Shown piece by piece: positions 1,352-56,596 of a stretch of DNA of 64,000 nt. The first letter of the stretch is position 1. Every line of letters starts with the position of its first letter. This DNA is from Leucoraja erinacea (lineage: Eukaryota), in contig NC_073393.1 of NCBI RefSeq assembly GCF_028641065.1, positions 16,058,001 to 16,122,000 of the forward strand, given 5' to 3'. The translations under genes and the position numbers were made by a program. The notes beneath the pieces were generated by a model that was not told the origin of the DNA, did no database searches, and worked only from the letters and a program-made list of their open reading frames with translations.

Positions 1352-1458
1352 TCAGGACTCGTCTCCCTGAACAAAGCTGGAATTACTCGGCCAAATGCAG
1401 CTTTTAAGACTGAGACGGTGGTCCGGTTTTGAGTAAATAGTGCAATTTTCAGTTAAAT
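1352..1458 (-). CDS. Gene A last coding exon (DLTENCTIYSKPDHRLSLKSCIWPSNSSFVQGDES*)
   Basis: Pyrimidine tract followed by aacag acceptor; degenerate tyrosine motif TIYSKP; AATAAA on the minus strand at 1336-1331. Confidence 0.55.
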
Positions 1459-4400
1459 CTGTTAAAGAAACAAAACATTTAAAGTTTATATCAACTGAAT
1501 TATTGTGATAAGGCCCCTAGCGTTCTTACCCGTTTCTATCACATACCCGGAGGTCTTTCCATGTTCCTCTCTGTTCATTGTTTGCTCTGATGTCTCGACC
1601 AATCGGTCAACCTTTACCACGGAGCCTAGATAGGAAGACAAACTAATTGGGTACTATAGTGCAGATTTGGCGATCGTGAGTTATTTTGAATGTTGACATA
1701 TTTTCTTACACCACTCTTATTATGAGCCGACAACACTTCTAACGGGCGCCGATTCCCTATTGCCCAATTTGTGCACCCGACTAAAATCGATTTGTCGCCT
1801 TTGTCTCCAGATGGGTTCGAGGTCAAGGCGAGAGAGTCACCACTAAATGATACTTTGAATAATTATCTGAACATCAGTTTTGAAGACATTCCCAACGCTT
1901 CATCGGACAGGGATCAGCCGCGGCTGGGCTCCATCCTTCAGAAGCAAAAACAATGGGATGGGGACCAATTCGGGCAGATGCAGAAATCACAACATTCAGC
2001 GGAGTCCCGACTGACCACAAAAATGAAAGAAGGAACGGCAATAGTGCCGACAACTTTTAAATCAAAGGATTGGGAAATAATCAATTTATCCAACATGCAT
2101 TGGCCCAAGATAAACAATTGCACAAAGCTGTAACTTGAGGAAGGAAACCGCTCCAAGTGGCGACATCTAAATTACAACCGCTCTCATCTTCCAATTCTGC
2201 ATGTGGCGTTTCATCATTGGAACAATTATTTTATAACAGTTCGATTAGAAGACGGTATTGTATTCCTTGATATTAACGATGATTAACAATTTATTTTTCT
2301 AAGCTCTTTCAATGCCCTCTTTTGATTTTGGATTTTTACAAGTGAATTTGGAACACTGGTGATAGCGGAGACTTGACGGTATTGTTGTCCTCTGTGAGTC
2401 TGGGGATGGAGAACTGATATAATTCTGTACCGTTTGGGGATCACGGTCTTGTTATTAACAATGTGGCCAAATAGCATCAATTCACGTAGCGTCATTTGAT
2501 TCTCCGCAGCACCATTTTACAGGGAATTTGAAGATGAACTCTACAATGAAGCTTCATTCACCTTTGGCAGAGCTTGATCCAAAAACAATTCTCAAGGTAG
2601 CCAACACCAGTAGAATGATTAATGTACCTCCTACATTGCGAAGGACAAGGACAACGCTGGCCGAACCTGCAGACGTAAAAAGTAATTGAGCAATAAGACA
2701 ATTATCACAAGTGAATGAACAAACTATAGAATTGTATTTGTGTAAAGAGCTTTATCAAGTGTCACTGTACTACAAAAAATATCCAAATAAAATAGCAATA
2801 TTAGGCAAATGGACACTGTACAAAATAAACGGGAGATCTTGCTTCCAATATGAACAATATTGTTATTGCATTATATGTCAACGAGTGATACATTTCCAAG
2901 TCAAGCTAGTGTGCAATTTGGAAGGCAGCCTGCAGGCCGCGGTGTTCACATGCACCTGCTGCCCTTGTCCTTGTTGGTGATCCAACCTGTCCAGAAATCT
3001 ATAAATGTCAATCCTCACTTTTCAAACATCTGCAACGCGTCGAGGTAGGGAATTACAAAGATTCACTCATCTGTGAGAAGAGTCATACAGTCACAGAATG
3101 ATACAGTGTGGAAACAGGCCCTTCGGCCCAACTCGCCTACACCGGCCAACAATGTCCCTGCTAACCTAGTCCCACTTGCCTGTGCTTGGTCCATAACCCT
3201 CCAAACCTTTCCTATCCATGTACCTGTCCAACTGTTTCTTAAACGATGGGATAGTCCCAGCCTCAACCACCTCCTCTGGCAGCTTGTTCCATACACCCTC
3301 CCACTCTGTGTGAAAATGTTACACCTCGGATTCCTATTAAATCTTTTCCCCTTCACCTTGAACCTACAGTATGTCCTCTGGTCCTCGATTCCCCTACTAT
3401 GGGTAGAATCTGTGCATCTACCCGATCTATTCCCCTCATAATTGTGTACACTTCTATAAGATCTCCCCTCATCCTCCAACGCTCCATGGAAGAGAGACCC
3501 AGCCTACTTAACGTCTCCCTATAGCTCACACACTCTCTAGCCCTGGCAACATCCTCGTAAATCTTTTCTGAACCATTTCAAGATTGACAATATCTTTCCT
3601 GTAACATGGTGCCCAGAACTGAACACTATATTCTAAATGTGGTCTCACCAACGTCTTATACCACTGCAACATGACCTCCCAACGTCTATACTCAATACTC
3701 TGAATGATGAAGGCCAAAGTGCCAAAAGCCTTTTTGACCACCTGCGATTCGACCTTCAAGGAACCATGCACTTGTACTCCTAGATCCCTCTGCTCTACAC
3801 CACTAGCATTTACTGTTTAGGTCCTGCCCTTGTTCAACTTCCCAACATGCAACACCTCAAACTTCTCTGTATTAAATTCCATCAACCATTCCTCTGCCCA
3901 CCTGGCCAAGCGATCCAGATCCTGCTGCAATCGTTCACAACCATCTTCACTATCTGCAAAACCACTAACTTTTGTATGATCAGCAATCTTGCTAATCTTG
4001 CCCTGTATGTTCTGATCCAAATTATTGATGTAGATGACAAACAGTAACGGGCCCAGCACCGAACCCTGTGGCACACCACTAGTCACTGGCCTCCATTCTG
4101 AGAAGCAACCTTCCACTAACACTCTCTATATTCTTCCATGGAGCTAATTTACTATCCATTCAGCTATCTCTCCTTAGATCCCACGAGATCTAACCTTCCA
4201 AAACAGCCAACCACGCGGCACCTTGTCGAATGCCTTATTAAAATCCATGCACACATCTACAGCTCTGCCCTCATCAACCTTTTTGCCCACGATTTTAAAA
4301 AAATCAATCAGATTGTGATACACGACGTCCCACGTACAAAACCATGCTGACTGTCCCTAATCAGCCCATGCCCATCCAAATGCATGGATAACCTATCCCT

Positions 4401-7400
4401 CAGAATACTCTCCAGTAACTTATCAACTACAAATGTTAAGCTCTCCAGCCTATAGTTCCCAGCATTTTCCCTGCAGTCCTTCTTGAAAAGAGGCACAACA
4501 TTTGCCACCCACCAATCCTCTGGCACCTCTCTTGTATTTAAGGACGACATACATTTCATTCAGGGCCTCCGCAATTTCCTCCATTGTGTCCCGCAATGTC
4601 CTCTGATATATCCGACCAGGCCCCAGAGATTTGACTACCTTCAAACACGACAGTACCTTTAGTACTTCCTCGACAGTACTTCCTCGATGCTCTCATGACA
4701 CTTCCAGTAACTGCTCCAATTTCCTCCATCCTACTGTTTTCTCCTTGGTAAATGCAGAGGAGAAATACTCTTTGAGGGCCTTACCCATCTCCTGTAGCTC
4801 CACACAGAGGTGACCGCTTTTTATTCCTGAGAGGTCCCACTTTCTCTCTGGTTATCCTTTCCCCCCTTATGTTTTTACAAAATCTTTTCGGATTGTCTTT
4901 TATGGTACCCGCCAGAGCTATCTCCTGGACAATTTTTGCCCTTCTGATCTCCTTTTTTAGTTTGCTCCTTATTTCCCAAAACTCCTCCAGCGATGCACTT
5001 ATCCCAACTGCCTTTACCTGTCCCATGCATCCTTTTTGTTTTTGACTAACGTCTCAATTTCCCTCGTCAGCCAAGCTTCTTTACGTTTGCCTGCTTTGCC
5101 TTTCACTCTAACGGAGACGTAGACCCCCTGAGCTTTCTACAGTTTAAAACATCCCACTTGGCCGATGTTCCTTCCCCCTCAAATAACCTGCCCCAGTCAA
5201 GTTGAGCTAGACCTTCTCTCATACCCTCAAAATAGTGAACTATCTCAACATTGCAAAGTCATTTCCCGACTATATATAAAGAACGTGTACCTCTATCCCC
5301 ATCTCATTGATTGTGTCGTTTTGATTATTTTTGTTTGCTAACATCTCTGACAGCCTTGAAGGTTTAACCACGTCACAGACACTATAAATATTGAAGATGC
5401 AGATATAATTTAGAAAACAGATGAGAGCATATGATACGCCAGTATGCCCGAACTCCCGCGGTGAATAAACACGGTCAACATTCAGCCCGTCTAGTCGTGT
5501 TTGAGCTGTATCCATCAATATTTCTAAATCGGATCGGAGGTCTCCCTCTGTTCCCAGCTCTGTTTGCCAGTCTTACCTGGCTTGACGGTGTAGTCGACTC
5601 TGGCCGGGACCGCAAGGGAGACATGTGACACTAGGCAGGTGTAAATATCAACGCGCCAGGTAGGCTTTGTTACTTGGAGAAAGCTGGAAGCCACATGCAA
5701 CCCCTCCATGCTACTGGTGTTCACACGTTCTTCCCCGGTGGAAATTGTTACACCATTTCTTTGCCAGGATATTTTGACTTCCTTCGGGAAAAAGGCAGCC
5801 GTTTTACACACAAGTCTGGGCGGCGAACTGCCATTAACTTGGCTAATGCTCAGGGGAGTTGGCGGAGCTGTAACAGAAGAAAAAATATGTTGCATATTTT
5901 CTTTCCAATTCAACGATAACATTCTAGTTTGCCTCGTCACACCGCGACCTTGCACTCCCACCATCAGATCGGTTATCAGTACAATCGCGTTTGCACTCAC
6001 TGATTTGTCATTGTTTTAGATTTGACAGTGAAATATATCCAAGCAATACACAAGGAGGTTTGGATGTAGGTAATATGTGGGCTTCTGAACAATCGCCAAT
6101 GTTCTGAAGTGCCAAATCAGTAGCGTGGCGGGGGTGTATCATCGCTGGTAACAACTTTTTATGTTCAGTTCACAAATTACTATTTTTACGAGATTTTGGT
6201 GCAAGGAATGATACGTGTAGAATGGAATATCACAGAGATACGCAGCACAGCACAGAACAGCCCAGATTACCTATTGCGTCATTAAACGTCCATCTCCACG
6301 TATTCATTTTTCATCTCCTGTCAACTTTCCTCTTCACTCCTCACCTCGACCAATCAACCGGGACAATTTACAGAGACTAGTTTTCCTACCAACCTGCAGA
6401 TCTGTGGCATGCGGAATAAACCGGAGCACCGGTGGAATGTCTACGCGTTGAAGGGGAGAAATATATATGGACGCACGCAGGATCTGGGTCGAACTTGGGT
6501 CGCTGAAATTGTGGGCAGCGCTAACCAATGTAGCGCTGTATATATCCAGATGTCACCAATATCAATAATCAAGAGGAAGGCCGTAGTTGCGTAGATGAAA
6601 GCTTGGGCCACACAATTGTTTAATACCTGGGATGGAGGGCTCAAGTGTTACAGCTTTTGGCCCGGGACGTTTCTCCACAACGCGAACTGAGCAATTTGAG
6701 CATGATAGAGTTATACTAATAATTATTAAGAAGGAAATGCAGATGTCTGGAGAAGGATCTCGACCCATTCCTTCTCTCCAGAGATGCTGCCTGTCCCGTT
6801 AAGTTGCTCCAGCTTTTTGTGTCTATTTACTGATAATTAGTATCGCCGTGCAAATATTAGACACTTCTTCAATAATTACAATACGCGAATGGGAAATCCA
6901 AATTAGACTACGTCTCTTCTACAATTTTGCCATTTTCCAAATGTACTCGGTTTGTTGAAGACGTTTGGTCTGAATGAGCTTTCACATATCAGCACAGAGT
7001 GGGTCATTTGTGAACGCTGATCTACCTCCGTCGGATCTACAATCAGTAGCTAGTTAGTAGGAGGCCTCTTGTAAATCGCTGTACGAGTTGATGACTACGA
7101 GTTTAATAAGTTTTAAACATTTTTACATTCCGTTTCTTTAGTAACAGGTTGTTGGATCGGTTTCTTTATTGAACTCGGAGGAGACCTCGATGCTTATTCT
7201 CAGCCTCGGCGAATGCATCATCAGCTAAAACGTAAAATTAATCTGTGGCACGAACACGGATCTATTTAGATAGAATGAATAATTGGGGGGAAACGTGGAG
7301 AGACTGATTCATGTGGGAAACGTGGTTGAGTCATGTAAGAATGTAATTGTAAGGACAGCTCATGCGTTTGCCCCAATGCCGTTAAATCTTACTCGTATTT

Positions 7401-9122
7401 TATAAAGGTTAAGGGTTTAATGAGAATCCTCAGACGGTGATATTCTGTCCCTGGAGTAAGAATCGAGCAAATCAAACCTCTCCACGGTTTATAGGATTCA
7501 TCTGTATAATAACCATGGTGGTTTGATCCGGGGTTTAGCTTCGTTTACAGCCGACGAATAAGAGTAGAATATTTAAGGCCGAGGCCGCTCCGTTGTTCAA
7601 TTCAATGGTGGTTTGTGCGTCAGGTCTCTGTGTCACAAACCCTGTTGTCACATACCCCACGATACCTAATCTAAATGAATATTCTAACATCCCAATCTCG
7701 AGAGATCGATTTATTTTCTTGTTTCCAGACTTTAAGTGATTAAATGATTACAGATTTCGGAGATAATTTGTAAGGTGGCGCGTAAAAAGCGAAAATTATG
7801 TGTGAATCAATATGGACTGTAAACACTATTCTTATGAGATTGTAACCACTATTGGCGTAGAGTGGTGGCGTTTGAATATTGTTTTAAAGAGCCTATCCAG
7901 GATGGAGGTGTTAAAATTATTCCATTGTCTTCGGGAGCAGAAATGGGACATTCCTATCACAACTGAGATTAAAACATCCACGTGGCTTCAACATTTTCCA
8001 TGAAAAACAATTCTAAACAACCTTTTAATCTAAGTCATTTGATGTAAATACATTCAAGCACACCATGGAGGGTAGTAAAGGGTGAATCTGAATCGTGGGC
8101 AATAACGCCAAAGTGGACAGCGCGAATCTGCAGGAGAGCAATGGAAAATCTCTGGAGAAGTACGAAATGAGGAAAAGGACATTTTCTCTCTACACAGATG
8201 CTGACCCACTTACGGATTATTTAAATATATCAGATTTGGAACGGTTTGTTTTTATAGTATAAATCTTATCGAGTTTTTGCCGAGTTATAAAATGTCATGT
8301 TATTCATATCAGCGAGCTTTACTTGTACCCAGGGAAGCTTTAGATTTTTCCCTTTACAGGGCACTTACCGATCACAGTGAGCCTTGAGCCAAGTCCATTT
8401 CTGATAGATTGCTGCTGAACTTTCAATTTACAATAATAAACCCCGGAGTCCGCGATTTTCGCATTCAGGAGAATGAAATACGCACTGCCCTTTCTGGTAG
8501 AAAATTGTTTTCTGCTGTCTGGTTCTATAAATGTCTTCTCGCCCCATCTCCACCAAGAAACAGCAGGAGTAATTTGTTGTATTGAGAATGTGCAGAACAT
8601 GGACGCATTGCCTCCTCTGTGGACGGTCAGGTCTTTAGGGAATTGGTCCACTTTGGTTGAAGTTACTTCGAAGGCTGCCAGAAATAAAACAAGAATACTG
8701 AAAACAGTTGGCCATCCGGACAAGCAAAATGAACAAAGAGTTGAAAAAGTCAAAATAAACTAGAATCGGACATAAACGAATTAAGAAGCACTGTAACTAA
8801 ATTCGTGCTTGGTAACCAACATAGAATATTCTAAGGAGATACAAGGAACTGGTTTACAAAAAAAGACACCGAGTGCTGGAGTAACTCAGCGGCCAAGAGT
8901 CTTCTTTAGATTCTGAAGTAGTTTCGACCCGAAACGTCACCTATCCACGTTCTCCTTAGATGCTGCCTGACCCACGGAATTACTCCAGAACTACATGTCT
9001 TTTTTAAAAATAGAATATTATAAAACATGACATGAGATTCGGAAACCCCACATGTATCTAAACGTACCGTGCCAAACTGTAGCCAGAAGAGTCATGTATC
9101 GAACTGATGCTCCAAACGACAT
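1352..9122 (-). CDS. Gene A model: VJ-C1-TM Ig-superfamily receptor with a TM arginine, about 319 aa, candidate activating receptor (NKp30/SIRP-like)
   Basis: Exons 9122-9068, 8674-8369, 5867-5577, 2666-2562, 1625-1530 and 1458-1352. All introns are GT-AG and phase 1, and the frame is open to TGA at 1354-1352. Confidence 0.8.
1530..1625 (-). CDS. Gene A cytoplasmic exon 1 (GSVVKVDRLVETSEQTMNREEHGKTSGYVIET)
   Basis: tctag|..|gtaaga, 96 nt, phase 1-1, open frame. Confidence 0.6.
2562..2666 (-). CDS. Gene A TM exon GSASVVLVLRNVGGTLIILLVLATLRIVFGSSSAK
   Basis: tgcag|..|gtgaat, 105 nt, phase 1-1; hydrophobic helix with an Arg near its N-terminal end. Confidence 0.8.
3080..5235 (-). mobile_element. 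CR1 LINE, degenerate ORF2 (reverse transcriptase) and 3' UTR
   Basis: ANVVPLFKK, SQHGF, SGVPQGSVLGPLLF, LVRPHLEY motifs, interrupted by frameshifts. Confidence 0.93.
5577..5867 (-). CDS. Gene A Ig C1-set exon
   Basis: tacag|..|gtaaga, 291 nt. LVCKTAAFFP..W..YTCLVSHVSL fits the Ig/MHC C1 signature Y-x-C-x-V-x-H. Confidence 0.92.
8369..8674 (-). CDS. Gene A Ig V-set (VJ-joined) exon
   Basis: ggcag|..|gtaagt, 306 nt. Contains C..WWR..DSGVYYC and a J-like end, NGLGSRLTV. Confidence 0.92.
9068..9122 (-). CDS. Gene A leader exon MSFGASVRYMTLLATVWH
   Basis: 55 nt from ATG to G|gtacgt; same length and homologous position as the leader exon in B, C and D. Confidence 0.8.
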
Positions 9123-15454: not shown

Positions 15455-15722
15455 TTGGCTTGTCGATGTAGCAGAAACCATACGACACAAGACAGGTGTA
15501 GTCATCGTTATCCCCGGCAGGCGGCGTTATTTCCAAATAGCTGCAAACATAAAAAGGTCCGGCCGTGCTTTCACAGGGTGTTTTTTTCCGGTCAGAACCT
15601 CCATCTCATTTATTCGCCATGCAATTTCAAAGCTCTCTGGTTAAAGGGCAGACGTTTTACACACGAGGTTACGAGGAGGAGAAATCCTTCAACCGGAACA
15701 AATTTTAAGGAAGTTGGTGGAG
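15455..15722 (-). pseudogene. Orphan C1-set pseudo-exon of the same receptor family
   Basis: PPTSLKFVPVEG / PPRNLVCKTSAL*PESFEIAW / YLEITPPAGDNDDYTCLVS. Stop TAA at 15643-15641, frameshifts (268 nt), acceptor AG changed to AC. Confidence 0.85.
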
Positions 15723-36290: not shown

Positions 36291-36428
36291 TCAGTTACAC
36301 GTCTTTTTTGAAGTATTCACATCTGCGTACACCGTGTATTTGTTGTTCTGTTTGGATGCTGATGTTTTCTTGGGGTTGTGATGTTGCACAGTTGCGTAGG
36401 TCAGCTTGTCATGTCCACCTCTTTTAGT
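36291..36428 (-). CDS. Gene C last exon (TKRGGHDKLTYATV..YTVYADVNTSKKTCN*)
   Basis: cgcag acceptor, 138 nt to TGA; ITIM LTYATV and ITSM TVYADV. Confidence 0.88.
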   Translation of the reverse strand, partial: TKRGGHDKLTYATVQHHNPKKTSASKQNNKYTVYADVNTSKKTCN

Positions 36429-39400
36429 CTGCGAAAGTAATTAATGATCGGTGATTAGACAATCATTCAGTGACGAATTTGAGCATACTGCTTTAAAATA
36501 ATATTTTATGCAACCCATCAGTTGTTATTTTTACAATGGTATTGATTTGCAGATTTATTTTTGGCTATACCTTTCTGCTTGATATTGAGTTTAAACGCGA
36601 GGAGCTGTTCTTGTCCCATAAAATAATTATTTTCTTTTTCGTTTATGTCAACTTCGATGTAATTACGAAAGTTAGGAGAATTGGTGAATGCTCAAAATTG
36701 TATCCGCAGTATTAAATATTTGGCATAATACGGAGCTCCTTTTAGAGTGTATTTGTGGGATTGGCGGGAATCCATTTTGCCTGTCGAGCCCAAGAGGTGG
36801 TTCGCAGACTGAAGCTACCGGTACCTCTCCAATAGATACCGCGGCTCACTGCTTCATCAGTGGCACCGAAATGCAATAGAATATAAGTTGGTACTACTTC
36901 CTATGGCTCTGCGTCCCCAGTTTTTGACACGAGTCTCCTATTCGGTGGATAATTTGAACGGCTTGTTTACTCTCTTTTCCCAGGCCATTGTCTTGCATTT
37001 GTATTTAGTTTCGCCCTGATTATGAGAACTGGGTAGGTTTGTGTGTTCCTAACTTCCCACCCTTTGTTTCTTCACATACAATTTACATTTGAATTTAAAC
37101 CCGAATAAGGAAAGGAAAATTATATTTATGCTCTGATGAGCAGCGGGTGATAGGTTTTACTTAAATGAAGATTTGCTATTGTGCACTTATATTTTCCCTG
37201 CAAAATAGTTTGGAAAAAGAAACTACATTTGGAACAATGCTCATTCCATATCTTAATTACGCTGTCCAAGAGCATTACCTGTGAATAGACGACATGTTGT
37301 TCTTCTTGTAAACCATTTGAAAATCCTTTGCTCTCGCTTAAATTCAGTGTAGCATAGGCAGCGGTATGTTCAATTGGTGCTTGTCTCACCTATTAGAAAA
37401 GTACATTTAATACTGCGGGTGACCAGGCTTATATAGCTGATAGGGCACTAGAACTGTATCTGGGGCTGAAAATCGATGCACGCGGGATATAGAGGAATAG
37501 ATTAACATTTCACTTGCTTTCAATGATATTACCAACTATGTCATTTCAAGGAAGGGGGTGGACAATGGTGTTCGTCGAGTTTCCTGGCGATAAACATCAC
37601 CAATAATTTGCACTGGCCCAACCACATTAATGCTAACGCCATGAAAGCACACCATTGCCTCGACCTTCCCAGAGGACCAAGGAGAGTTGGACGGTCTCCA
37701 AAGTCTCTTCCCAAATTCCACAGCTGCACTGTCGAAATAATTATATGGGGATGAATCCCAAATTGGTTTAGCGACAGCTTTACCCAGGACCTTAAGAAAC
37801 GCAGGAACCTGTGATTGCAGCCCAGCCAACCACGTAAACCAGCTTCCGTCATTCTCTCCTCTTCCCACGGCGGACAGAATACACAATAGCTTAAAATCGC
37901 CTTGTGTAAGATTTAAAAACAGCTTTATACTCGATGTTATCAAGTTACTAAACAGGCGTCACGCAAGCTAATGGTGCAATCCTGATCTGTGATTTACCTC
38001 GTTCTGGTCCTTGCGTTTTTAAAATGTGGAATTTCTCTTTAGCTGTAACACAATATTTTGCATCCTGTGTCATTTCCCTTTTTGCACTTGGGTATGGTAT
38101 GATTGTACCCATACATGGTATCCATTTTTCGGATTGCACGCAAAATAAAGTTTATAATTGAATCTCGGTGTACATGACAATAATTAACCAGTGCCAATAC
38201 GAATATCAGTCTTTTGCAGATTTTGGAGATTTCTTCTTCTAAGCTTTGCAGAGTGGAAGATGCATTTGTAGGATTCCATTTAGCAGCCAGCACAAAATAG
38301 TAATTTTGTGGGAAGCAGTTTCGATGCCATGTAGGCCATATCCGGTGAAATGGCCCTTCGTTAAGGATCGAAGCCAAAACTGCAATTAACACGTTAAAGA
38401 ACGGCTCAAGAAAGCAAATTAAATTCTCGACAAATGTTCTTTTCATTTTTATTTTAATTACCGTGCTTTGGAATTCAATATAACTTTTGCCTTACGGATT
38501 GATTGTTGCACTTACTCTCCCATTGGTCAGCAACCCACAATCTCTTCGTAGTCTGATATTTGATACGTTCTCACTATCTAAAATTATATTTTTAAGTGTT
38601 CCTGAACTAATAGCACCAGAATTAATAAAAGCTCATATTTGCATCCTAAACATCACCTTTCACTTTAGAATAAATTAGGATATGATCTGGCATGGAATTG
38701 TCAAAAGATGTTGAAGCAGATACAACAGGAATTTTCAAATTATTAGTGGATGTATACTTGACGTAACCTGAAAAATAAATAATGGTTTCATCCTGCCCTA
38801 GAGTATTCCACGATACTATAGAATAGAACTGATTTATAATATTTCTGCTACGAATAATCCCTATTTTGAAACAAGAGGAGACATTTCACCTACCGGCTCC
38901 CCGTTCGGACGTATTCCTACAGAGGTTACGTTATGGCCTAGAAGAATGAAATAAGAGTTACATAAAACAACTTCAATTGTAAAGATTGATCTGTAGATTT
39001 TGACATTCTTCTTCTCATATTAATCAAATTTACTGCAGAAAATAAGAACGATTGCATTTTTAAATATCCGATGGTGCTCAGCAGCACCAATTGTCACAGT
39101 TATAACAATACAACGCATCTTGTACTCTTTCGCGATGTTGCGCCCACTGGACCTAAATTTTAACTGAAACTTTAAAATTGTAATGGTTTATAAGGAACCG
39201 TGTCCATGTCGAAACAGCAATGTAATGTAAACATATGGAGATGTTTGGTTTTGCTCATTGCCACAGAAAACCACAGTTGTTTTTTCCTCAAAATTGTAAT
39301 CTTCCATTGCATTAATTATCAATCACACTGGATTTGAAGAATTCCTTATATTTGAAAATATATGCATAGGTGATAATTGAATACATCCAATTCCAAGCTG

Positions 39401-42400
39401 AAATAATTGAATTTGAAGATCCATCATATTATCACACTCATATATCAAAACCGGCTTCAGAACTCTCTTTACATGTCCATCTACGTTTCCTTTTCTCCTC
39501 TGTGAGCAAACACCATTGACATATCCATTCTCGTTTTAACCATAGAAATGATTATTGTATGATTATTATCAAGATTCTTACCGTGCCACATCTTTAAACT
39601 GAGTCTCATCACGATTATAATCAGAACTAAAATTACTGATCCACCTACTGCATATACGATAATCTGTTTGCGACCAATTCCTGGTGGATTAACAGAAAAT
39701 TTAGAAACTGTAAAGAATTTATACATTTCAGAACAATTATACAAACGGCAGTCAACAAAGTAAATCATTTCGTAGGTGTATTTTAATACCCACATCGGAA
39801 AGTTTGGAAGGTATATCATGAGGCACCAGATGGAAGTTAGTAATGGAATCCACAGGACAAGCAATTGCCGTTGTATTGTGCCCATGCGCGGAGAGCTGCT
39901 TACTAGCGTTAAGCGGAATTTAGGCTTTATCTTCATATATTTCACCAGACAGTAGATATATACATATAACCATATAACAATTACAGCACGGAAACAGGCC
40001 ATCTCGGCCCTACAAGTCCGTGCCGAACAACTTTTCTTCCCCTTAGTCCCACCTGCCTGCACTCACACCATAACCCTCCATTCCCTTCTCATCCATATGC
40101 CTATCCAATTTATTTTTAAATGATACCAATGAACCGACCTCCACCACTTCCACTGGAAGCTCATTCCACACCGCTACCACTCTCTGAGTAAAGAAGTTCT
40201 CCCTCATATTACCCCTAAACTTCTGTCCCTTAATTCTGAAGTCATGTCCTCTTGTTTGAATCTTCCCTATTCTCAAAGGGAAAAGCTTGTCCACATCAAC
40301 TCTGTCTATCCCTCTCATCATTTTAAAGACCTCTATCAAGTCCCCCCTTAACCTTCTGCGCTCCAGAGAATAAAGACCTAACTTATTTAACCTATCTCTG
40401 TAACTTAGTTGTTGAAACCCAGGCAACATTCTAGTAAATCTCCTCTGTACTCTCTCTATTTTGTTGACATCCTTCCTATAATTGGGCGACCAAAATTGTA
40501 CACCATACTCCAGATTTGGTCTCACCAATGCCTTGTACAATTTTAACATTACACCCCAGCTTCTATACTCATTGCTCTGATTTATAAACGCTAGCATCCC
40601 AGGACGTTTTTGCTCATTACAATCATTATATCAATTCAGTTTGTCAATTGATCTCACACGGATCTCCTTACAAGAACTGATGAAGTACAATTCATTTTAA
40701 ACAGCATGCAAGTGTTGCTTTCATGCGAATAAATGCGAGCCACATTTACCCTTGTACGGAAAGCTGTCCAGTTATTAATCTGATCGAATTTGATCTACCG
40801 CCCCAATATCATGTGTAACTGGCTCCAGTCTTACCTTGGCCCAGGGTATAACTGAAACTGGCCGCCACCTTCAGGGAGACATGTGATACCAGACAGGTGT
40901 AAATATCTTTGCCCTCCCCAGGCTGCGTTATTTCCAAAGAACTAGTAGCCACAAACAATCCTTCTTCGCTCGGTTTTTTCACAGTTTCGATTCCAGTGCG
41001 AATTTCCTCGTTATTTCTTAGCCAAAATATTTCTAATTTCTCCGGATAAAAGGCGCCAGTTTTGCACACAAGTTTCCGTGGAGAGCCAAGTCCTTCAGCA
41101 GGAACAATTGTCAAGGGAGTTGGGGGATCTTAAGCAAAGAAAAAAAAATTATCGGGTGTTCGCTTTCCATTTCATTGTAAAATATTTACATTTTATCTCG
41201 CCACCGAGTCGTATTTGTCAAGACCAAATTATTTAATATTTAAACTTCCCAGTTTGTCGTTCATTTATACTCCCTTTCCTAGCGGACAACCGGACGAACT
41301 CCGCCAAGATACAAAGAGGGTGAATTTAAGGAGTGCCAACAGAATTTAAGGAGTTCCAAAATAAACTCTGTTCTGAATGGACGTTCCCCGGTATCGCGCG
41401 AAAGTTTTTGCCAGAAGTCTGCCGTGATTATTTAAAAGTGGCCATGTTCGGATCATTCATATGTTGCAAAAGAAATGGAGCCATAATCGAAATATAACAG
41501 ATTCGTATAGTGTGGTGACAAGAAGCGGTTATACATGAAGATTAATGATTAATCCCGTTAGCACTTTAAGTAGTATATGGATTAAATCTCCTCACCCTGG
41601 TCAAAAACACCCACTTCAACACTTAATCACTACTCTACTCTACTCTACTCACTCCGACATGCGGGAGATAACCACTTATCACGTGTTTGCGCAGTAATCA
41701 ACCAGAACCAGAACCAGATATGGGTTTGAAATGCCGATCACAACCATTTACCTGCATGTGAACCAAGTGCTGGAACACCTTTCTCGCGCATTGAATGCTT
41801 ATAGTGAAACACCGTGGTTTCTATTACAAGCAATTTACGAGCGCACTTATTCTATGTCAGTATGTAGGAAAGAACTGCAGATGCTGGTTTAAACCGAATA
41901 TATGTTGGAGTAACTCAGCGGGACAGGCAACATCTCTTAGGAGAAGGAATGGGGGACGTTTCGGATCGAGGTTTGAAGAAGGGTATAGACCCTAAACGTC
42001 ACTCATTCCTTCTACCCAGAGATGCTGCCTGCCCCGCTGAGTTACTCCGGCATTTTGTGTCTCTATACAAATCAGTTCCATCTGTTGTGTAAACTTGGTG
42101 ACAGCGAATCGACAACGCTAGATCGGCGTTAATGATGATAGCTTGCAGAAGCCAAACGAGGGAAAAGAACAAGCTCTGTTTCTCGCTGTACAGATTCTAC
42201 TAATTTAGGTCTGCACGCAAAGGTCCTATATTTGGCATTTATTAACGCGAACTCCTTCCGTTCGAGCTGCAGCCGGTGTCTAACTGGACGGGGAGTCGGT
42301 TGTTGGGTTGCTTTGTCGGTTCATTACAAACAATCTCTTTAGAAAGTTTGACTTAATTCACTTAATCGGGATAATCTTTAACAATGAAAGAAATATTACT

Positions 42401-43758
42401 GTTTATTCCCTGACTTTAAATAATAATGATATGAGGGAATTTCAGTTTTTTTCCTCTTTTTTCCTCCGTACGTTGACAAATTGGTGGGATAGACTGGAAT
42501 TATGCATTACATAATTAGTGTCAAGCGTTTCCAAACAAAAAAATATTACATTGAAGTCAGCTTGGAGTCAGGCAGCGATGAGGAGCTGGCAGGTCCCGCA
42601 TCTTGGAACACCAAGGTGCTGGGGTTGCAACTGCACATTGATCTTCCGAGGTTCTAAAGCTGTCGATGTAGATTAGAGGCATGGCAGACTCTAGGATCAA
42701 CGTATCGTATTGCCCCTACTTTCTTTTCTTGGTGATGAGAAACCTAGACATCATATTCCAGCCATTCAAACTAACAGAAATATTAATTCAATATCTCACT
42801 GCAAAACATGTCTTACCACACCTCAGAATGAATTTCTTCCAAGTCAAGCACTTACCCGTTCTTAGCGATACATCCACTTGGGTGATTGGCTTAAAATTCG
42901 CGACCACTAAATTAATGGGTTGCGCCGAAGGCAATAAAAATGCTTCTCGAAAGGTACCGTGTAATGAACAGAATAACCCTCAATACCCACGCGTCCCACA
43001 AGTGCTACCCGACCTGGTGATTATACACAGTGTGCATTGTTTCATTTTGAATAACCAGTCTATGTAATGCCTTTATTTAAAATTGTTATTACCGGGTATT
43101 TATTAACAGGCGATTTTTCATATTATCCTCGCGACTAGGTTTTACTTTGCAAATAGCATAGAACTGAAAATTGCTTATTTCCCTAACACACACACACACA
43201 CTCACCCAATACAGTGATCTGGCTGCCACTTCCATTCCCGATAAACTGATGCTGAAACTTTACTTGACAGTAATACAGACCGGAGTCAGCGACACGAACA
43301 TGTTGGAGAGTAAATGTTCCCCTTCCAGAATCTATGGTAAATTGTTTTCTACTGTCCGGTCCTAGGAATGTGTTCATGCCGCCCCTCCACCAATTAACGT
43401 CAGTTGTGTCTTGCGATATTGGAAATTTGCAATACATGATAGCATTTTCACCGCCGCCAACGTCCAAGTTGACAGGGAATTGCGATACTCCGCTCGAAGA
43501 AACTTCGGTAGCTGCCAGGAAATAAGCAAGAACAATGGAAACAGTTGTAAACACTGGACAGGGAAAAGAAGAACCAACTGTCGAAAAGCACGAAACAACT
43601 AGAAACCCACGAGGGCCTAATAGATGAACCTAATAGCTCGAAACCATGTCCGACCACGAAAAATAATATTTAAACCAGAAATGGCACACATAATTAACTA
43701 TACCCTGTCTAAGTATAACCAGAAGAGCCATGGACCAAACTGTAACTTTCGCCGACAT
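36291..43758 (-). CDS. Gene C model: VJ-C1-TM inhibitory receptor with an ITIM/ITSM tail, about 348 aa
   Basis: Exons 43758-43704, 43511-43206, 41128-40835, 39680-39582, 38937-38894, 37389-37279 and 36428-36291; all GT-AG, 1047 nt open frame. Confidence 0.88.
37279..37389 (-). CDS. Gene C tyrosine-motif exon (VRQAPIEHTAAYATLNLSESKG..VVYSQ)
   Basis: aatag|..|gtaatg, 111 nt; paralogous to 26039-26149. Confidence 0.88.
38894..38937 (-). CDS. Gene C 44-nt cytoplasmic exon (GHNVTSVGIRPNGEP)
   Basis: tctag|..|gtaggt; matches the gene B exon in size and phase. Confidence 0.8.
39582..39680 (-). CDS. Gene C TM exon (GIGRKQIIVYAVGGSVILVLIIIVMRLSLKMWH)
   Basis: accag|..|gtaaga, 99 nt. Confidence 0.88.
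39955..40597 (-). mobile_element. CR1 3' fragment in the C1-TM intron of gene C (absent from gene D)
   Basis: 184-aa ORF containing LYKALVRPNLEY..FFTQRVVAVWNELP. Confidence 0.93.
40835..41128 (-). CDS. Gene C Ig C1-set exon
   Basis: ttaag|..|gtaaga, 294 nt; LVCKTGAFYP..W..YTCLVSHVSL. Confidence 0.93.
41862..42063. repeat. Palindromic Penelope-derived short element (paralog at 54811-54973)
   Basis: The left arm GGAGTAACTCAGCGGGACAGGCA..GACGTTTCGG is the reverse complement of the right arm AAACGTC..TGCCTGCCCCGCTGAGTTACTCC. Confidence 0.75.
43206..43511 (-). CDS. Gene C Ig V-set (VJ-joined) exon
   Basis: ggcag|..|gtgagt, 306 nt; DSGLYYCQVKFQHQFIGNGSGSQITV. Confidence 0.93.
43704..43758 (-). 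CDS. Gene C leader exon MSAKVTVWSMALLVILRQ
   Basis: 55 nt from ATG to G|gtatag. Confidence 0.85.
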
Positions 43759-50253: not shown

Positions 50254-50292
50254 GCCGGGTGGGGTGGGGGGGGGGGGGGGGGGGGGGGGGGG
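50222..50292 (+). repeat. (TG)n microsatellite followed by poly-G
   Basis: Direct inspection. Confidence 0.9.
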
Positions 50293-51063: not shown

Positions 51064-51213
51064 CTACAGCTTCGATTCCCAGCTTCGCTCCTTCATTAAA
51101 ACAATTCCATCTGCATAAGGTACACGTTCCTCTTTCTGGCTAAATGTTACTGCTGATTGGAGTTGAGTAACTGCAAATCGACATGATACAACGTAGAATC
51201 TATCATCTTTAGT
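51064..51213 (-). pseudogene. Degenerate last-tail exon (TKDDRFYVVS..VPYADG..KL*)
   Basis: The acceptor context (ttactttcacag|ACTAAA) is paralogous to the last exons of B and C; both ITIMs are degenerate. Confidence 0.6.
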
Positions 51214-52432: not shown

Positions 52433-52531
52433 CATTTTGTGCCTTTAATTGGAGTCTTATCAAGATAATGACCAAAACTAAAACTGCCAACACACCCACT
52501 GCGCATCCGATAATTAGGTTTTTATCTGCAG
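52433..52531 (-). CDS. Second TM exon, gene-B type (AADKNLIIGCAVGVLAVLVLVIILIRLQLKAQN)
   Basis: ataag|..|gtgaga, 99 nt, phase 1-1; shares DK-LI-GC-VG..LKAQ with the gene B TM exon. Confidence 0.75.
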
Positions 52532-53169: not shown

Positions 53170-53268
53170 CGGGCCACATCTTTAAACTGAGTCTTATCAC
53201 GATTATAATCAGAATTAAAAGTACTGATCCACCTACTGCATATACGATAATCTGTTTGCGATCAATTC
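53170..53268 (-). CDS. Gene D TM exon 1 (GIDRKQIIVYAVGGSVLLILIIIVIRLSLKMWP)
   Basis: atcag|..|gtaaga, 99 nt; paralog of 39582-39680. Confidence 0.85.
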
Positions 53269-56200
53269 CTGATGAAGCAACTGAAAATTAAGAAACTGTA
53301 AAGAATTTATACATTTCAGAACAAATATACAAACGGCAGTCAAGAAGGTAAATCATTTCGTAGGTGCATTTTAATACCCACATCGGAAAGTTTGGAAGGT
53401 ATATCATGCGGCACCAGGTGGAAGTTAGTAATGGAAGCCACAGGACAAACAAATGCAATTGTATTGTGCCCATGTGCGGAGAGCTCCTTACTGACGTTAA
53501 ACGGAATTTATGCTTTATCTTCATATATTTCACCAGACAGCGGAATACCGCATATCCCAGGACGTTTTTGCTCATTACAAACACTATATCAATTCAGTTT
53601 GTCAATTCATCTCACACGGATTTCCTTACAAGAACTGATGGAGTGCAATTCATTTTATGCAGCATACATGTGTTGCTTTCATGCGAACAAATGCGAGCCA
53701 CATTTACTTTTCGCTCCGTGTACGGAAAGCTGTCCAGTTATTAATCTGATCGAATTTGATCTACCGCCCCAATATCACGTGTAACTGGCTCCAGTCTTAC
53801 CTTGGCCCAGGGTATAACTGAAACTGGCCGCCACCTTCAGGGAGACATGTGATACCATACAGGTGTAAATATCTTTGCCCTCCCCAGGCTGCGTTATTTC
53901 CAAAGAACTAGTAGCCACAAACAATCCTTCTTCGCTCGGTTTTTTCACAGTTTCGATTCCAGTGCGAATTACCTCGTTATTTCTTAGCCAGAATATTTCT
54001 AATTTCTCCGGATAAAAGGCGCCAGTTTTGCACACAAGTTTCCGTGGAGAGCCAAGTCCTTCAGCAGGAACAATTGTCAAGGGAGTTGGGGGATCTTAAG
54101 CAAAGAAAAAAAATGTATCGGTGTTCGCTTTCCATTATATTTTATCTCGCCACCTAGTCGTATTTGTCAAGACCAAATTATTTAATATTTAAACTTCCCA
54201 GTTTGTCGTTCATTTATACTCCCTTTCCTAGCGGACACACGGACGAACTCCACCAAGATACAAAGAGGGTGAATTTAAGGAGTGCCAACAGAATTTATGG
54301 AGTTCCTAAATAAACTCTGTTGTGAATGGATGTTCCCCGGTATCGCGCGAAAGTTTTTGCCAGAAGCCTGCCGTGATTATTTAAAAGTGGCCATGTTTGG
54401 ATCATTCATATGTTGCAAAAGAAATGGAGCCATCATAATCGAAATATAACAGATTTGTATAGTGTGGTGACAGGAAGCGGTTATACATGAAGATTAATGT
54501 TTAATCCCGTTAGCACTTTAAGTAGTATATGAACTAAATCTCCTCACCCTGGTCAAAAACACCCACTTCAATACTTAATCACTACTATACTCTACTCAGT
54601 GAGATAACCACATGAGGTGTTTGCGCAGTAATCAACCAGAACCAGAACCAGATATGGGTTTGAAATGCCGATCACAACCATTTACCTGCATGTGAACCAA
54701 GTGCTGGAACACCTACCTTTCTCGCGCTTTTAATGCTTTTATTAAAACACCGTGGTATATATTACAAGCAATCTACGAGCGCACTTATTCTATGTCAGTA
54801 TGTAGGAAAGAACTACAATAGCTGGTTTAAACCGAACAGCAACATCTCTTCGGATAACGAATGGGTGACGTTTCTGATCGAGGTTTGAAGAAGGGTATCG
54901 ACCCCAAACGTCACTCATTGCTCCTACCCAGAGATGCTGCCTGCCCCGCTGAGTTACTCCAGCATTTTGTGTCTCAGTTCCATCTGTTGTGCCAACTTGG
55001 GGACAGTGAATCGACAACGTTAGATCGGCGTTAATGATGATAGCTTGCAGAAGCCAAACGAGGGAAAAGAACAAGCTCTGTTTCTCGCTGTGCAGATTCT
55101 ACTCAGTTAGGTCTGCACGTAAAAGGCCCTATATTTGGCATTTATTAACGCGAACTCCTTCCGTATGAGCTGCAGCCGGTGTCTAACTGGACGGGGAGTT
55201 GATTGTTGGGTTGTTTTGTCGGTTTATTACAAATCTTTAGAAGCTTGACTTAATTCACTTAATCAGGATAATCTTTAACGATGAAATAAATGTTACTGTT
55301 TATTCCCGGACTTTAAATAATTTCAGTTGAGGTGTTGTTTACTTCTTTTTTCCCCCGTACGGTGCCAAATTGGTTGAATAGACTGAGGTTATGCCTGACA
55401 AAATTAGTGTCAAGCGATGTCAAAAAAAAGAAAAAAGATTTCATTGAAGTAGCTTGGAATCAGCAGCGATGAGTCCCACATGTTGGAATACCAAGGTCCT
55501 TGGGTTGCAGCAGCACATTGGTCTTATGAGGTTCTAAAGCTGTCGATGTAGAATAGAGGCATGACAGACTCTACCATCGACGTATTACAATTGCTCCTAC
55601 TCTCTTTTCTTCGTGATGAGAAACCTGGATATCACACTCCAGCCACTCAAACTAACAGGAATATCATTTAAATATCTCATCGCAAAACATTTCTAACCAC
55701 ACCTCAGAATGAATTCCTTCCATCTCAGCATTTACCCGTTCTTAGCGATACATCCATCTGGGAGATTGGCTTAAAATTCATAGCGGCAATGAAAAGGAGT
55801 CTCGCAAAGTATCGTACAATGAACAGAATAACCCTCAATGCCCACGCGTCCCACAAGTGCGACTCGACCTGGTGATTATGTACATTGTGCTTTGTTTCAT
55901 TTTGAATTACTGGTCCCTGTAATTTAAAATTGTTACTACCGGATATTTTATCAACAGGAGATTTTTCATATTATCCTCGCGACTAGACTTTACAAATGAC
56001 ATAGAACTGAAAATTGCTTATTTCCCTAACACACACACTCACCAAATACAGTGATCAGGCTGCCACTTCCATTTCCGATAACCTGATGCTGGAACTTTAC
56101 TTGACAGTAATACAGGCCGGAGTCAGCGACACGCACATGTTGGAGAGTAAATATTTCCCTTCCAGAATCTATCGTAAATTGTTTTCTACTGTCCGGTTCA

Positions 56201-56596
56201 AGGAATGTCTTCATGCCGTCCCTCCACCAATTAACGCCAATAGTGTCTTTCGATATTGGAAACGTGCAATACATGATAGCATGTTCACCGACGCCAACGT
56301 CCAAGATGGCAGGGAATTGGGACACTCTGGTCGGATAGACTTCGGTAGCTGTCGGGGAAAAAACAAGAACAATTGAAACATTTGTAAACACTGGACAGAG
56401 AATACAGGAACCAACTGTCGAAAAGCACGAAACAACTATAAACCCACGAGCGCCTAATAGATGAACCTAATAGCTCGAAACCAGGTCCGAATTTTCGAAA
56501 AATAATACTTAGACCAGAAATGGCACACATTTTAACTATACCCTGCGTTAGTATGACCAGAAGAGCCATGGACCAAACTCTAACTTTCACTGACAT
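53170..56596 (-). CDS. Gene D model (leader-V-C1-TM), recent paralog of gene C; 3' end uncertain or chimeric
   Basis: Exons 56596-56542, 56348-56043, 54094-53801 and 53268 (or 53280)-53170, all intact. No C-type tail exons follow downstream. Confidence 0.8.
53801..54094 (-). CDS. Gene D Ig C1-set exon
   Basis: 294 nt; differs from the gene C exon at 2 amino acids. Confidence 0.93.
56043..56348 (-). CDS. Gene D Ig V-set (VJ-joined) exon
   Basis: gacag|..|gtgagt, 306 nt; DSGLYYCQVKFQHQVIGNGSGSLITV. Confidence 0.93.
56542..56596 (-). CDS. Gene D leader exon MSVKVRVWSMALLVILTQ
   Basis: 55 nt from ATG to G|gtatag. Confidence 0.85.

What the first reader, a model, noticed from the sequence alone, without database searches (positions are those of the whole stretch)
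1352..56596. Cluster of non-rearranging, germline-joined VJ-C1 receptors forming a paired inhibitory/activating family
Seen in sequence: four tandem genes with leader / single 306-nt VJ exon / C1 exon / TM, i.e. the ectodomain layout of an Ig light chain or TCR chain but with no V-J split and no recombination signals. Established knowledge: C1-set domains are largely confined to Ig, TCR, MHC, beta-2-microglobulin, tapasin, SIRP and a few relatives, and non-rearranging VJ-C1 genes are discussed as models of the pre-RAG antigen-receptor ancestor. The V domain ends C-x9-GxGxGSxLxV (CRVKHQLQLIGNGTGSQLIV), the same spacing I recall for NKp30 (CRVEVLGLGVGTGNGTRLVV). Inference: a diversified innate receptor family in a cartilaginous fish that combines an NKp30-like V, one C1 and SIRP-like signalling.
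Basis: partly seen in the sequence, partly recalled or inferred. Interest (0 to 1): 0.85.

Follow-up and report, generated by a model that had tools for sequence, protein, structure and literature searches.

The report
Skate antibody-like paired immune receptor genes
Four neighbouring genes in a skate-type genome encode cell-surface immune receptors whose outer part resembles an antibody light chain built without DNA rearrangement; they belong to a family found in all cartilaginous fishes and already predicted, under inconsistent names, in public annotations.

Summary
Four tandem minus-strand genes each have a leader, one unsplit VJ exon (306 nt in A, C and D; 297 nt in B), one C1-set exon and a TM exon. 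All junctions are AG/GT and in phase 1, and no recombination signals flank the V exons.

- **Genes B and C** carry a 44-nt exon plus two tail exons with ITIM/ITSM-type tyrosines, so they look inhibitory.
- **Gene A** has an Arg in its TM and a 12-residue tail, so it looks activating.
- **Gene D** has a rearranged 3' end with a second TM exon and a tail exon whose tyrosine motifs are broken.

The family is not private to this genome. Full-length relatives occur in at least 12 sharks, rays and a chimaera. RefSeq calls the ITIM-tailed ones "SIRP-alpha-like" and gives the others unrelated names.

As a profile, the ectodomain is about equally close to Ig lambda V-C, UrIg2 and SIRP-alpha/gamma. A predicted structure matches Ig light chains and TCR beta. 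A special kinship of the V domain with NKp30 was not supported.

Not resolved:
- Four RNA runs showed no reads on gene B.
- MHC linkage of this locus could not be tested.

Other first-reader notes and one follow-up on this genome report the same kind of gene on other DNA.

Verdict: a real, ordinary-to-interesting new member of a known kind.

The parts
9068..9122 (-). Gene A leader exon (starts MSFGASVRYM..., GT donor, phase 1)
   Evidence: It matches the leaders of shark and ray relatives in tblastn. The DNA context is shown and the frame was checked.
8369..8674 (-). Gene A VJ exon, 306 nt, ending YYC...NGLGSRLTVI
   Evidence: Pfam scores it V-set/I-set.
5577..5867 (-). Gene A C1-set exon, 291 nt
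   Evidence: Pfam C1-set E 1.2e-12. Boundaries.
2554..2666 (-). Gene A TM exon with Arg about five residues into the membrane span (VVLVLRNVGG...), a 12-residue tail and a stop
   Evidence: AG acceptor, and in frame with C1. The xRxxGG TM motif is shared with short-tailed relatives such as P0006 and P0101.
15484..15722 (-). Orphan decayed C1 exon (stop codon and frame breaks), relic of a fifth gene
   Evidence: tblastn with relatives. blastn to the C1 exons gives 67-72% identity, and the translation is shown.
29649..29703 (-). Gene B leader exon
   Evidence: Frame checked.
29137..29433 (-). Gene B VJ exon, 297 nt, holding the quoted CRVKHQLQLIGNGTGSQLIV
27634..27930 (-). Gene B C1-set exon, 297 nt
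26998..27108 (-). Gene B stalk/TM exon with no charged residue in the span
26549..26592 (-). Gene B 44-nt cytoplasmic exon that shifts phase 1 to phase 0
   Evidence: Found through relatives' tails by tblastn. AG/GT sites are shown, and the exon restores the frame.
26039..26149 (-). Gene B tail exon 1: SAYATL (ITIM) and VVYAE|T
   Evidence: Conserved in shark and ray relatives.
24921..25058 (-). Gene B tail exon 2: LTYTSL and SMYAGV, then a stop
43704..43758 (-). Gene C leader exon
43206..43511 (-). Gene C VJ exon, 306 nt
40835..41128 (-). Gene C C1-set exon, 294 nt
39582..39680 (-). Gene C TM exon
38894..38937 (-). Gene C 44-nt cytoplasmic exon
37279..37389 (-). Gene C tail exon 1 (AAYATL, VVYSQ|T)
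36291..36428 (-). Gene C tail exon 2 (LTYATV, TVYADV, stop)
56542..56596 (-). Gene D leader exon
56043..56348 (-). Gene D VJ exon, 306 nt
53801..54094 (-). Gene D C1-set exon, 99.0% identical to gene C's
53170..53268 (-). Gene D TM exon 1 (C-type)
52433..52531 (-). Second, B-type TM exon downstream of gene D, with intact AG/GT sites
51064..51213 (-). Degenerate tail-exon-2 homologue of gene D. Both tyrosine motifs are broken (RFYVVS, VPYADG).
   Evidence: blastn link to gene C's tail exon. Sequence and translation.

Best explanation
The window holds part of a large tandem cluster of germline-encoded, non-rearranging Ig-superfamily receptor genes. They belong to a family found throughout cartilaginous fishes.

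**Shown.** Each protein is a type I membrane protein with:
- a short VJ-type V domain that has the G-x-G bulge motif and lacks the C'-C'' hairpin;
- one C1-set domain;
- a single TM.

**Inferred.**
- Genes B and C are inhibitory. After ligand binding by the V domain, Src-family kinases would phosphorylate the tail tyrosines (S/AxYATL, LTYxxL/V, xxYAxV). These would then recruit SH2-domain phosphatases of the SHP-1/SHP-2 type, as SIRP-alpha does.
- Gene A is the activating counterpart. Its TM arginine would pair with an acidic residue of an ITAM adaptor of the DAP12, FcR-gamma or CD3-zeta type.
- Gene D is a recent copy of C whose signalling end has been rearranged and has probably lost inhibitory function.
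- The cluster evolves by birth and death, with tandem duplication, exon homogenisation and decay.

The ligand is unknown.
For: - **Gene anatomy.** Four sets of exons lie in the same order with canonical splice sites and matching phases. The conceptual splices are open for A, B and C.
- **Domain types.** Pfam gives V-set/I-set and C1-set. The PDB profile matches Ig lambda V-C, UrIg2 and SIRP-alpha/gamma. The AlphaFold2 model of a relative has pLDDT mostly above 90 across both ectodomains (residues about 30-220) and matches Ig light chains and TCR beta in Foldseek.
- **No rearrangement signals.** None flank the V exons.
- **Independent gene models.** Full-length L-V-C1-TM(-tail) RefSeq models of relatives exist in Mobula, Hemitrygon, Hypanus, Narcine, Pristis, Heterodontus, Heptranchias, Mustelus, Scyliorhinus, Pristiophorus and Callorhinchus. 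They confirm the exon joins, including the 44-nt exon.
- **Tails and TMs across the family.** Long-tailed relatives are auto-named SIRP-alpha-like, while short-tailed members of the same subfamily get other names. Relatives include forms with an ITIM tail and forms with a charged TM.
- **Birth and death.** C and D form a roughly 14-kb duplication at 86-93% identity. There is also an orphan C1 relic and a homogenised C1 exon.
Against: - No RNA reads fell on gene B's exons in four RNA runs. Only 5-32% of each run was read, the tissues are unknown, and the runs carry a different organism code from the DNA holders.
- Nothing here tests phosphorylation, phosphatase recruitment, adaptor pairing or the ligand.
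- After splicing, the second tyrosine reads YxxT, which is not a canonical ITIM.
- Gene A's exon has no close homologue outside general TM features. It may also splice onward rather than stop.
- The similarity to the SIRP-alpha tail rests on RefSeq product names and on my recollection of the human sequence, not on an alignment made here.
Confidence: 0.7

Rival explanations
1. The genes are the cartilaginous-fish NCR3 (NKp30) family, or part of it. That family is multi-copy in sharks and has been described in the literature.
For: - RefSeq names a V-only isoform of a distant subfamily member (P0122, Pristis) 'natural cytotoxicity triggering receptor 3-like', while its V-C1 isoform (P0200) is named SIRP-alpha-like.
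- Sharks carry several NCR3 genes: five between AIF1 and DDAH2 in the white shark MHC, and eight nurse shark NCR3 entries are cited in PMC12227049.
Against: - Human NKp30 structures are not among the 60 best PDB matches of the V profile, while TCR V-alpha, VNAR and CD79b are.
- NKp30 as known has no C1 domain.
- In the sawfish the family members sit on a 53.95-Mb sequence, whereas its MHC is on chromosome 34. Chromosome 12 already exceeds 55.6 Mb and numbering follows size, so chromosome 34 should be much smaller.
- The shark NCR3 paper (PMC8273117) could not be read, so the domain make-up of those genes is unknown to me.
Confidence: 0.17
2. The genes are B7-family ligands (B7-H6/NCR3LG1-like, PD-L1-like or CD276-like), as several RefSeq names say, and not receptors.
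For: RefSeq names several relatives this way. B7 proteins also have V plus a C1-like domain encoded by phase-1 exons.
Against: - The V exon ends in a J-type G-x-G-S/T-x-L-x-V strand.
- The tails carry ITIM/ITSM motifs, or the TM carries Arg.
- No B7 structure appears among the 60 best PDB profile matches, which are Ig, UrIg2 and SIRP.
- The names differ between near-identical paralogues, which is typical of automatic naming.
Confidence: 0.05
3. The genes are germline-joined immunoglobulin light-chain genes, or relics of them.
For: The best single V-C match of the family profile is a lambda chain (71.7 bits). Foldseek's best hits are light chains. Some relatives are named 'immunoglobulin lambda-1 light chain-like'. 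Germline-joined IgL genes exist in cartilaginous fish (established knowledge).
Against: - Every gene has a TM exon, and B and C have three cytoplasmic exons.
- The V domain is about 100 residues and lacks the C'-C'' hairpin.
- UrIg2 and SIRP score in the same range.
- The V domains of the family members collected here, including chimaera sequences, could be aligned and placed in a single tree, but that tree contains no IgL or other reference sequences.
Confidence: 0.03
4. The cluster is mostly dead: unexpressed pseudogenes left over from a past expansion.
For: No RNA reads on gene B. Gene D's tail is broken. An orphan C1 relic is present. The introns are full of transposons.
Against: - A, B and C keep complete open frames across 4-7 exons with intact splice sites.
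- dN/dS between the C and D V exons is 0.48.
- Tail motifs are conserved with species that diverged long ago.
Confidence: 0.05

Closest known systems
SIRP family (SIRP-alpha/beta/gamma; human SIRP-alpha structure 2WNG, PMC2785349)
   Same: - Non-rearranging V domain with a J-like strand, followed by C1-set domain(s).
- Paired inhibitory forms (four tail tyrosines) and activating forms (basic TM residue, short tail).
- SIRP-alpha and SIRP-gamma are among the best PDB profile matches.
- ITIM-tailed relatives are auto-named SIRP-alpha-like.
- From my recollection of human SIRP-alpha, the order and approximate spacing of the tail tyrosines look alike.
   Different: - One C1 domain instead of two.
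- A shorter V domain (about 100 aa, no C'-C'' hairpin).
- The second tyrosine is YxxT.
- Orthology is not shown: the profile is equally close to Ig lambda and UrIg2.
- No strong relative was found outside cartilaginous fishes.
UrIg and UrIg2 (elasmobranch non-rearranging VJ-C1 genes; PMC12227049, PDB 9DMX)
   Same: - A single-exon VJ followed by C1-type domains.
- Found in cartilaginous fish.
- Discussed as relatives of the pre-RAG receptor.
- UrIg2 is the second best PDB profile match.
   Different: - UrIg is secreted and has three C domains. UrIg2 has nine or more C domains and a TM. Both are described as individual genes, UrIg MHC-linked and UrIg2 linked to the Ig/TCR cluster.
- Here there is one C1, an ITIM tail or a charged TM, and a large tandem multigene cluster.
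NKp30 / NCR3
   Same: - A non-rearranging VJ-type V domain.
- An activating form with a TM arginine.
- Multi-copy in sharks.
- A RefSeq name on one V-only isoform.
   Different: - NKp30 has no C1 domain as known.
- It is not among the top PDB matches of the V profile.
- Sawfish family members appear to lie off the MHC chromosome.
Teleost NITR and other paired Ig-like receptor families (KIR, LILR, CHIR)
   Same: Tandem, fast-evolving clusters of inhibitory (ITIM) and activating (charged TM) receptors. NITR also has a J-like motif in its V domain (established knowledge).
   Different: The membrane-proximal domain of those families is I-type or C2-type, not C1-set. NITRs are known only from bony fish (my knowledge, not tested here).

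Membership tests
Non-rearranging VJ-C1 receptor genes (general class) | V and J encoded in one exon, with no RSS | tested here: met
   The 297/306-nt exons end in G-x-G-S-x-L/I-x-V. No heptamer-spacer-nonamer lies at the V exons.
Non-rearranging VJ-C1 receptor genes (general class) | The membrane-proximal domain is C1-set | tested here: met
   Pfam C1-set E 1e-8 to 1e-12. PDB matches to Ig C, MHC II beta2 and UrIg2. The model of a relative matches Ig light chains and TCR beta over V plus C.
SIRP family | V domain followed by C1-set domains (three Ig domains in SIRP-alpha/beta/gamma) | tested here: inconclusive
   V plus one C1 only. SIRP-alpha/gamma score 96-113 bits with the family profile, in the same range as Ig chains and UrIg2.
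SIRP family | Cytoplasmic tail with four tyrosines forming ITIMs that recruit SHP-1/SHP-2 | tested here: inconclusive
   Four tyrosines in B and C, three of them in ITIM/ITSM context. RefSeq names for long-tailed relatives point to SIRP-alpha. No alignment to a SIRP-alpha tail was possible with tool-supplied sequence, and phosphatase binding is not testable here.
SIRP family | Orthology: phylogeny or synteny with tetrapod SIRP genes, and CD47 as ligand | not testable with these tools
No strong hit outside cartilaginous fishes.
NCR3 / NKp30 | V domain closest to NKp30 among VJ-type V domains | tested here: not met
   NKp30 is absent from the 60 best PDB matches of the V profile, while TCR V-alpha, VNAR and CD79b are present. 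It is also absent from the top 60 for the gene B V exon alone.
NCR3 / NKp30 | Location in MHC class III next to AIF1 | not testable with these tools
   The window holds no framework genes. For the sawfish, indirect evidence points away from the MHC chromosome.
B7 family | V domain without a J-type strand, and a ligand rather than a signalling receptor | tested here: not met
   A J-type G strand is present. The genes have an ITIM tail or a charged TM. No B7 structure is among the top PDB profile matches.
Paired activating/inhibitory receptor cluster | Closely related ectodomains joined either to an ITIM tail or to a charged TM with a short tail, in one cluster | tested here: met
   B and C have the ITIM tail and A has the TM Arg. 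V domains are 54-57% identical to gene B's. Both forms also occur among relatives. Function is inferred.

The most novel reading that the evidence does not exclude
This may be a formally undescribed family of membrane-bound, non-rearranging VJ-C1 receptors that spans all cartilaginous fishes and is not MHC-linked. It would combine a compact VJ domain, a single C1 and a SIRP-type tail, and would descend from the stock that gave rise to SIRPs, and perhaps NKp30, before or around the RAG invasion. If so, it would be the closest living membrane-receptor model of the pre-rearrangement antigen receptor, and it would be testable in skates.
Probability: 0.25. Interest if true: 0.75.

Novelty: new member of a known kind. 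Interest (0 to 1): 0.45.

Why it matters
C1-set domains are almost confined to antigen receptors, MHC molecules and a few relatives. Single-exon VJ genes joined to C1 domains are therefore actively sought as relics of the receptor that the RAG transposon split (PMC12227049, PMC10751288, PMC2785349).

The family studied here is multigene, membrane-bound and signalling-competent. It occurs in sharks, rays and chimaeras. That would place SIRP-like V-C1 paired receptors at the base of jawed vertebrates, and it offers many natural variants for studying V-C1 receptor evolution.

The value of this window is limited because the family is already visible in public annotations of other species. Its inconsistent names are worth correcting.

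Tried and rejected
- **RNA support.** One call of read laying on 24500-29800 with four RNA runs (X6, X10, X13, X14) gave no reads on gene B's exons. The only reads were repeat-derived pile-ups at about 27500-27555, 25385-25738 and 24500-24676. This gives no verdict on expression.
- **Intermediate exon, first attempt.** A short B/C-conserved stretch (26257-26299 and 37503-37545) has no usable splice sites and was rejected. The true 44-nt exon was found through relatives' tails.
- **Alternative 'caag' acceptor.** I considered an acceptor 10 nt inside tail exon 1. It was dropped once the 44-nt exon explained the phase.
- **Retrocopy idea.** I considered that 15430-15760 was a processed retrocopy with V and C1 contiguous. 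blastn shows that only the C1 exon aligns, so it is an orphan exon relic.
- **Fetching NKp30 or SIRP reference sequences.** The word-indexed protein search with a V alignment found only chondrichthyan proteins. Trees against reference families could therefore not be built.
- **Papers not held.** PMC8273117 (shark NCR3 family), PMC3709836 (B7H6/NKp30), PMC4594805 and PMC10530332 (UrIg).
- **Further exons of gene A.** I searched between 1250 and 2550 and found nothing convincing.
- **Joined models.** No search or fold was run on a joined spliced model of the window's genes. Searches went exon by exon or used database relatives. The exons were joined only inside a script to check reading frames.
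Full report
**What is in the sequence**

The quoted peptide lies on the minus strand at 29141-29200. A scan for Y-x-C V-type ends found four V-like open segments on the minus strand, each followed downstream by a C1-like segment. The splice contexts give these exons:

| Gene | VJ exon | Length | C1 exon | Length |
|---|---|---|---|---|
| A | 8369-8674 | 306 nt | 5577-5867 | 291 nt |
| B | 29137-29433 | 297 nt | 27634-27930 | 297 nt |
| C | 43206-43511 | 306 nt | 40835-41128 | 294 nt |
| D | 56043-56348 | 306 nt | 53801-54094 | 294 nt |

All eight exons have an AG acceptor and a GT donor and are in phase 1-1. Pfam scores the V exons as V-set/I-set and the C1 exons as C1-set (E down to 1e-12).

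- Leader exons of 55 nt lie 200-400 nt upstream of each V exon.
- The V exons carry the J-type G strand (G-N-G-x-G-S-x-L/I-x-V) in the same exon as Y-Y-C.
- A heptamer-spacer-nonamer scan found five loose matches in 64 kb. None is in or beside a V exon.

The correction is that gene B's V exon is 297 nt.

**Signalling ends**

TM exons were found for all four genes. In B and C the TM exon ends in phase 1, but the first tyrosine-bearing exon opens in phase 0. Tails of relatives from other species revealed a 44-nt exon in between (B 26549-26592, C 38894-38937) that resolves the phase.

With it, the conceptual splices are open: 350 aa for B, 348 aa for C and 254 aa for A. That join was made only inside a script to check frames. 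No search or fold was run on a joined model.

- **B and C.** The tails have four tyrosines: S/AxYATL, VVYxx|T, LTYxxL/V and xxYAxV. Three are in ITIM/ITSM context and the second is YxxT.
- **A.** The TM reads ...VVLVLRNVGG..., with Arg about five residues into the span, followed by a 12-residue tail. The xRxxGG arrangement recurs in short-tailed relatives.
- **D.** It shares C's TM exon, then loses the 44-nt exon and tail exon 1. Downstream it has a second, B-type TM exon (52433-52531) and a tail-exon-2 homologue in which both tyrosine motifs are broken (51064-51213).

The 'paired inhibitory/activating' reading fits B, C and A. It does not fit D.

**Duplication history**

- C and D belong to a tandem duplication of about 14 kb (39121-49535 against 52743-64000, 86-93% identity).
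- Between C and D, the V exon is 89.8% identical (dS 0.19, dN/dS 0.48) and the V-C1 intron 84.7%.
- The C1 exon is 99.0% identical (dS 0.014), and the next intron about 92%.
- The C1 exon has therefore been homogenised locally, most simply by gene conversion.
- A decayed, orphan C1 exon lies between A and B (15484-15722).

**Relatives**

The C1 exon of gene A found full-length L-V-C1-TM proteins in manta rays and stingrays at 49-59% identity. A profile of the four V exons, searched against 1.84 billion representatives, found 33 hits at E <= 1e-30 and 263 at E <= 1e-10. The top of that list is dominated by very large multi-Ig proteins. Among hits of 800 aa or less, several dozen representatives have one V, one C1 and a TM.

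Names and species were obtained. The family occurs in:
- rays and relatives: Mobula (two species), Hemitrygon, Hypanus, Narcine, Pristis;
- sharks: Heterodontus, Heptranchias, Mustelus, Scyliorhinus (two species), Pristiophorus, Chiloscyllium;
- the chimaera Callorhinchus.

RefSeq product names are inconsistent. ITIM-tailed members are mostly 'tyrosine-protein phosphatase non-receptor type substrate 1-like' (that is, SIRP-alpha) or 'signal-regulatory protein beta-1-like'. Others are named 'natural cytotoxicity triggering receptor 3 ligand 1-like', 'immunoglobulin lambda-1 light chain-like', 'tapasin-related protein-like', 'CD276 homolog', 'M1-specific T cell receptor beta chain-like' or 'PD-L1-like'.

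An alignment-based search gave no strong hit outside cartilaginous fishes. That search depends on shared words, so absence is weak evidence.

A quick V tree contains only family members and the window's V exons, with no IgL, TCR, SIRP or NKp30 references. It puts all four window genes in a well-supported elasmobranch clade (36 rows, SH-aLRT 98). Within it:
- B groups with Narcine and Mobula genes (support 96);
- C and D group with another batoid lineage (support 95);
- A sits in the batoid polytomy near a Pristis gene.

At least three gene lineages in the window therefore predate the split of skates and rays. An earlier follow-up note of this scan calls the genome little skate (s1-141734). My identities to batoid proteins are consistent with that, but I did not test it directly.

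**What it resembles**

| PDB query | Result | Call |
|---|---|---|
| Family profile (V plus C1) | A lambda V-C pair best (71.7 bits for the pair), then UrIg2 (59.8 bits for its V-C1, 136 in all), SIRP-alpha (113 bits over two stretches) and SIRP-gamma (96 bits); plain light chains score about 89 bits | 83 |
| A Heterodontus relative alone | SIRP-alpha ranks second overall and first among V-C1 proteins, only just ahead of light chains | 58 |
| V-only profile | Best single-domain matches are I-set domains, a TCR V-alpha, shark VNAR and CD79b; NKp30 structures do not reach the top 60 | 91 (also 10) |

An AlphaFold2 model of the Heterodontus relative, built with a 22-sequence family alignment, has pLDDT mostly above 90 across both ectodomains (residues about 30-220). 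It shows a V domain without a C'-C'' hairpin, a C1 domain and a TM helix. Foldseek's best PDB matches are antibody light chains and a TCR beta chain over both domains.

It is about equally distant from Ig, UrIg2 and SIRP, and the claimed special likeness to NKp30 was tested and not met.

The SIRP-like nature of the tail is supported indirectly. Within one subfamily, the long-tailed protein is auto-named SIRP-alpha-like (P0042) and the short-tailed one is not (P0001). My recollection of human SIRP-alpha (ITYADLNLPKGKK, LTYADL, SEYASVQVPRK) matches SAYATLNLSEGKK, LTYTSL and SMYAGVKVSRK in gene B. That is a lead, not a test.

**Literature**

- SIRPs have been discussed as V-C1 relatives of the antigen-receptor precursor since 2009. 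[quoted passage not shown]
- UrIg and UrIg2 are the published elasmobranch non-rearranging VJ-C1 genes. Both differ in architecture from the genes here (PMC12227049).
- Sharks have several NCR3 genes in MHC class III, five between AIF1 and DDAH2 in the white shark (supplement of PMC10751288). Eight nurse shark NCR3 entries are cited.
- The paper describing those NCR3 genes was not available. I cannot exclude that part of this family has been described under the name NCR3.
- Against identity with the MHC-linked NCR3 genes: sawfish members of the family, including the one whose V-only isoform is named NCR3-like, lie on a 53.95-Mb sequence. The sawfish MHC is on chromosome 34, and chromosome 12 already exceeds 55.6 Mb.
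- My full-text searches found no paper describing a VJ-C1-TM-ITIM family in cartilaginous fish.

**Expression and linkage**

It found no reads on any exon, only repeat-derived pile-ups. Only 5-32% of each run was read, the tissues are unknown, and the runs carry a different organism code from the DNA holders. This is no verdict.

The window contains no framework genes, only the receptor genes and transposon fragments. MHC or paralogue linkage of this locus is therefore untested.

Other first-reader notes place more such genes 11 kb before the window, 5 to 160 kb beyond it, and about 3.8 Mb away on the same piece. I did not check those notes.

**Verdict**

It is unsupported on the NKp30 kinship and too optimistic on novelty.

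The most likely mechanism is that of SIRP-like paired receptors. The V domain binds an unknown ligand. The ITIM tail recruits SHP-type phosphatases in B and C. The TM arginine recruits an ITAM adaptor in A. All three steps are inferred from motifs.

The family is old and spans the cartilaginous fishes. It is already present in public gene models under inconsistent names, and as far as I could search it has not been formally described. I rate the locus a new member of a known kind, with moderate interest.

Noticed in passing
window 40835-41128 vs 53801-54094, and flanks: Between the duplicated genes C and D the C1 exon is 99.0% identical (dS 0.014). The V exon is 89.8% and the flanking introns 85-92%. 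This points to local homogenisation, probably gene conversion, of the C1 exon alone.
   Followed up: partly
window 26459-26548 and 38864-38893 (minus strand): Reading through the donor of the 44-nt cytoplasmic exon continues an open frame (B: VGEAILRVSKRD...; C: VGEMSPLVSK*). It resembles the C-termini of short-tailed RefSeq proteins of manta rays (P0001, P0043). Each inhibitory gene may therefore also make a short-tailed form without ITIMs by alternative 3' end use.
   Followed up: partly
window 15484-15722 (minus strand): An orphan C1 exon with a stop codon and frame breaks lies between genes A and B. No V, TM or tail exon was found beside it. It is the relic of a fifth family member.
   Followed up: yes
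window 52433-52531 and 51064-51213 (minus strand): Downstream of gene D lie a second intact TM exon of the gene B type and a tail exon whose two tyrosine motifs are both broken. Gene D's 3' end is a mosaic.
   Followed up: partly
window 27500-27555: A short repeat in the C1-TM intron of gene B collects hundreds to thousands of RNA reads in all four runs, on both strands. The reads show many mismatches, loose ends and strand-switch joints. This is the signature of a highly expressed dispersed repeat family, not of this locus.
   Followed up: no
window 3066-4559, 10609-11748, 17056-18029, 40046-40630, 58698-59189: Reverse-transcriptase-like open segments and 85-93% identical repeat copies fill the introns and spacers. 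One sits directly upstream of gene C's TM exon.
   Followed up: no
relatives P0048, P0085, P0172 (Scyliorhinus and others): Shark members of the family carry a different activating-type TM, with Arg near the outer end and Asp-His near the inner end (...RLVLGF...IIVDH...). Charged TMs may therefore have arisen more than once in the family.
   Followed up: no
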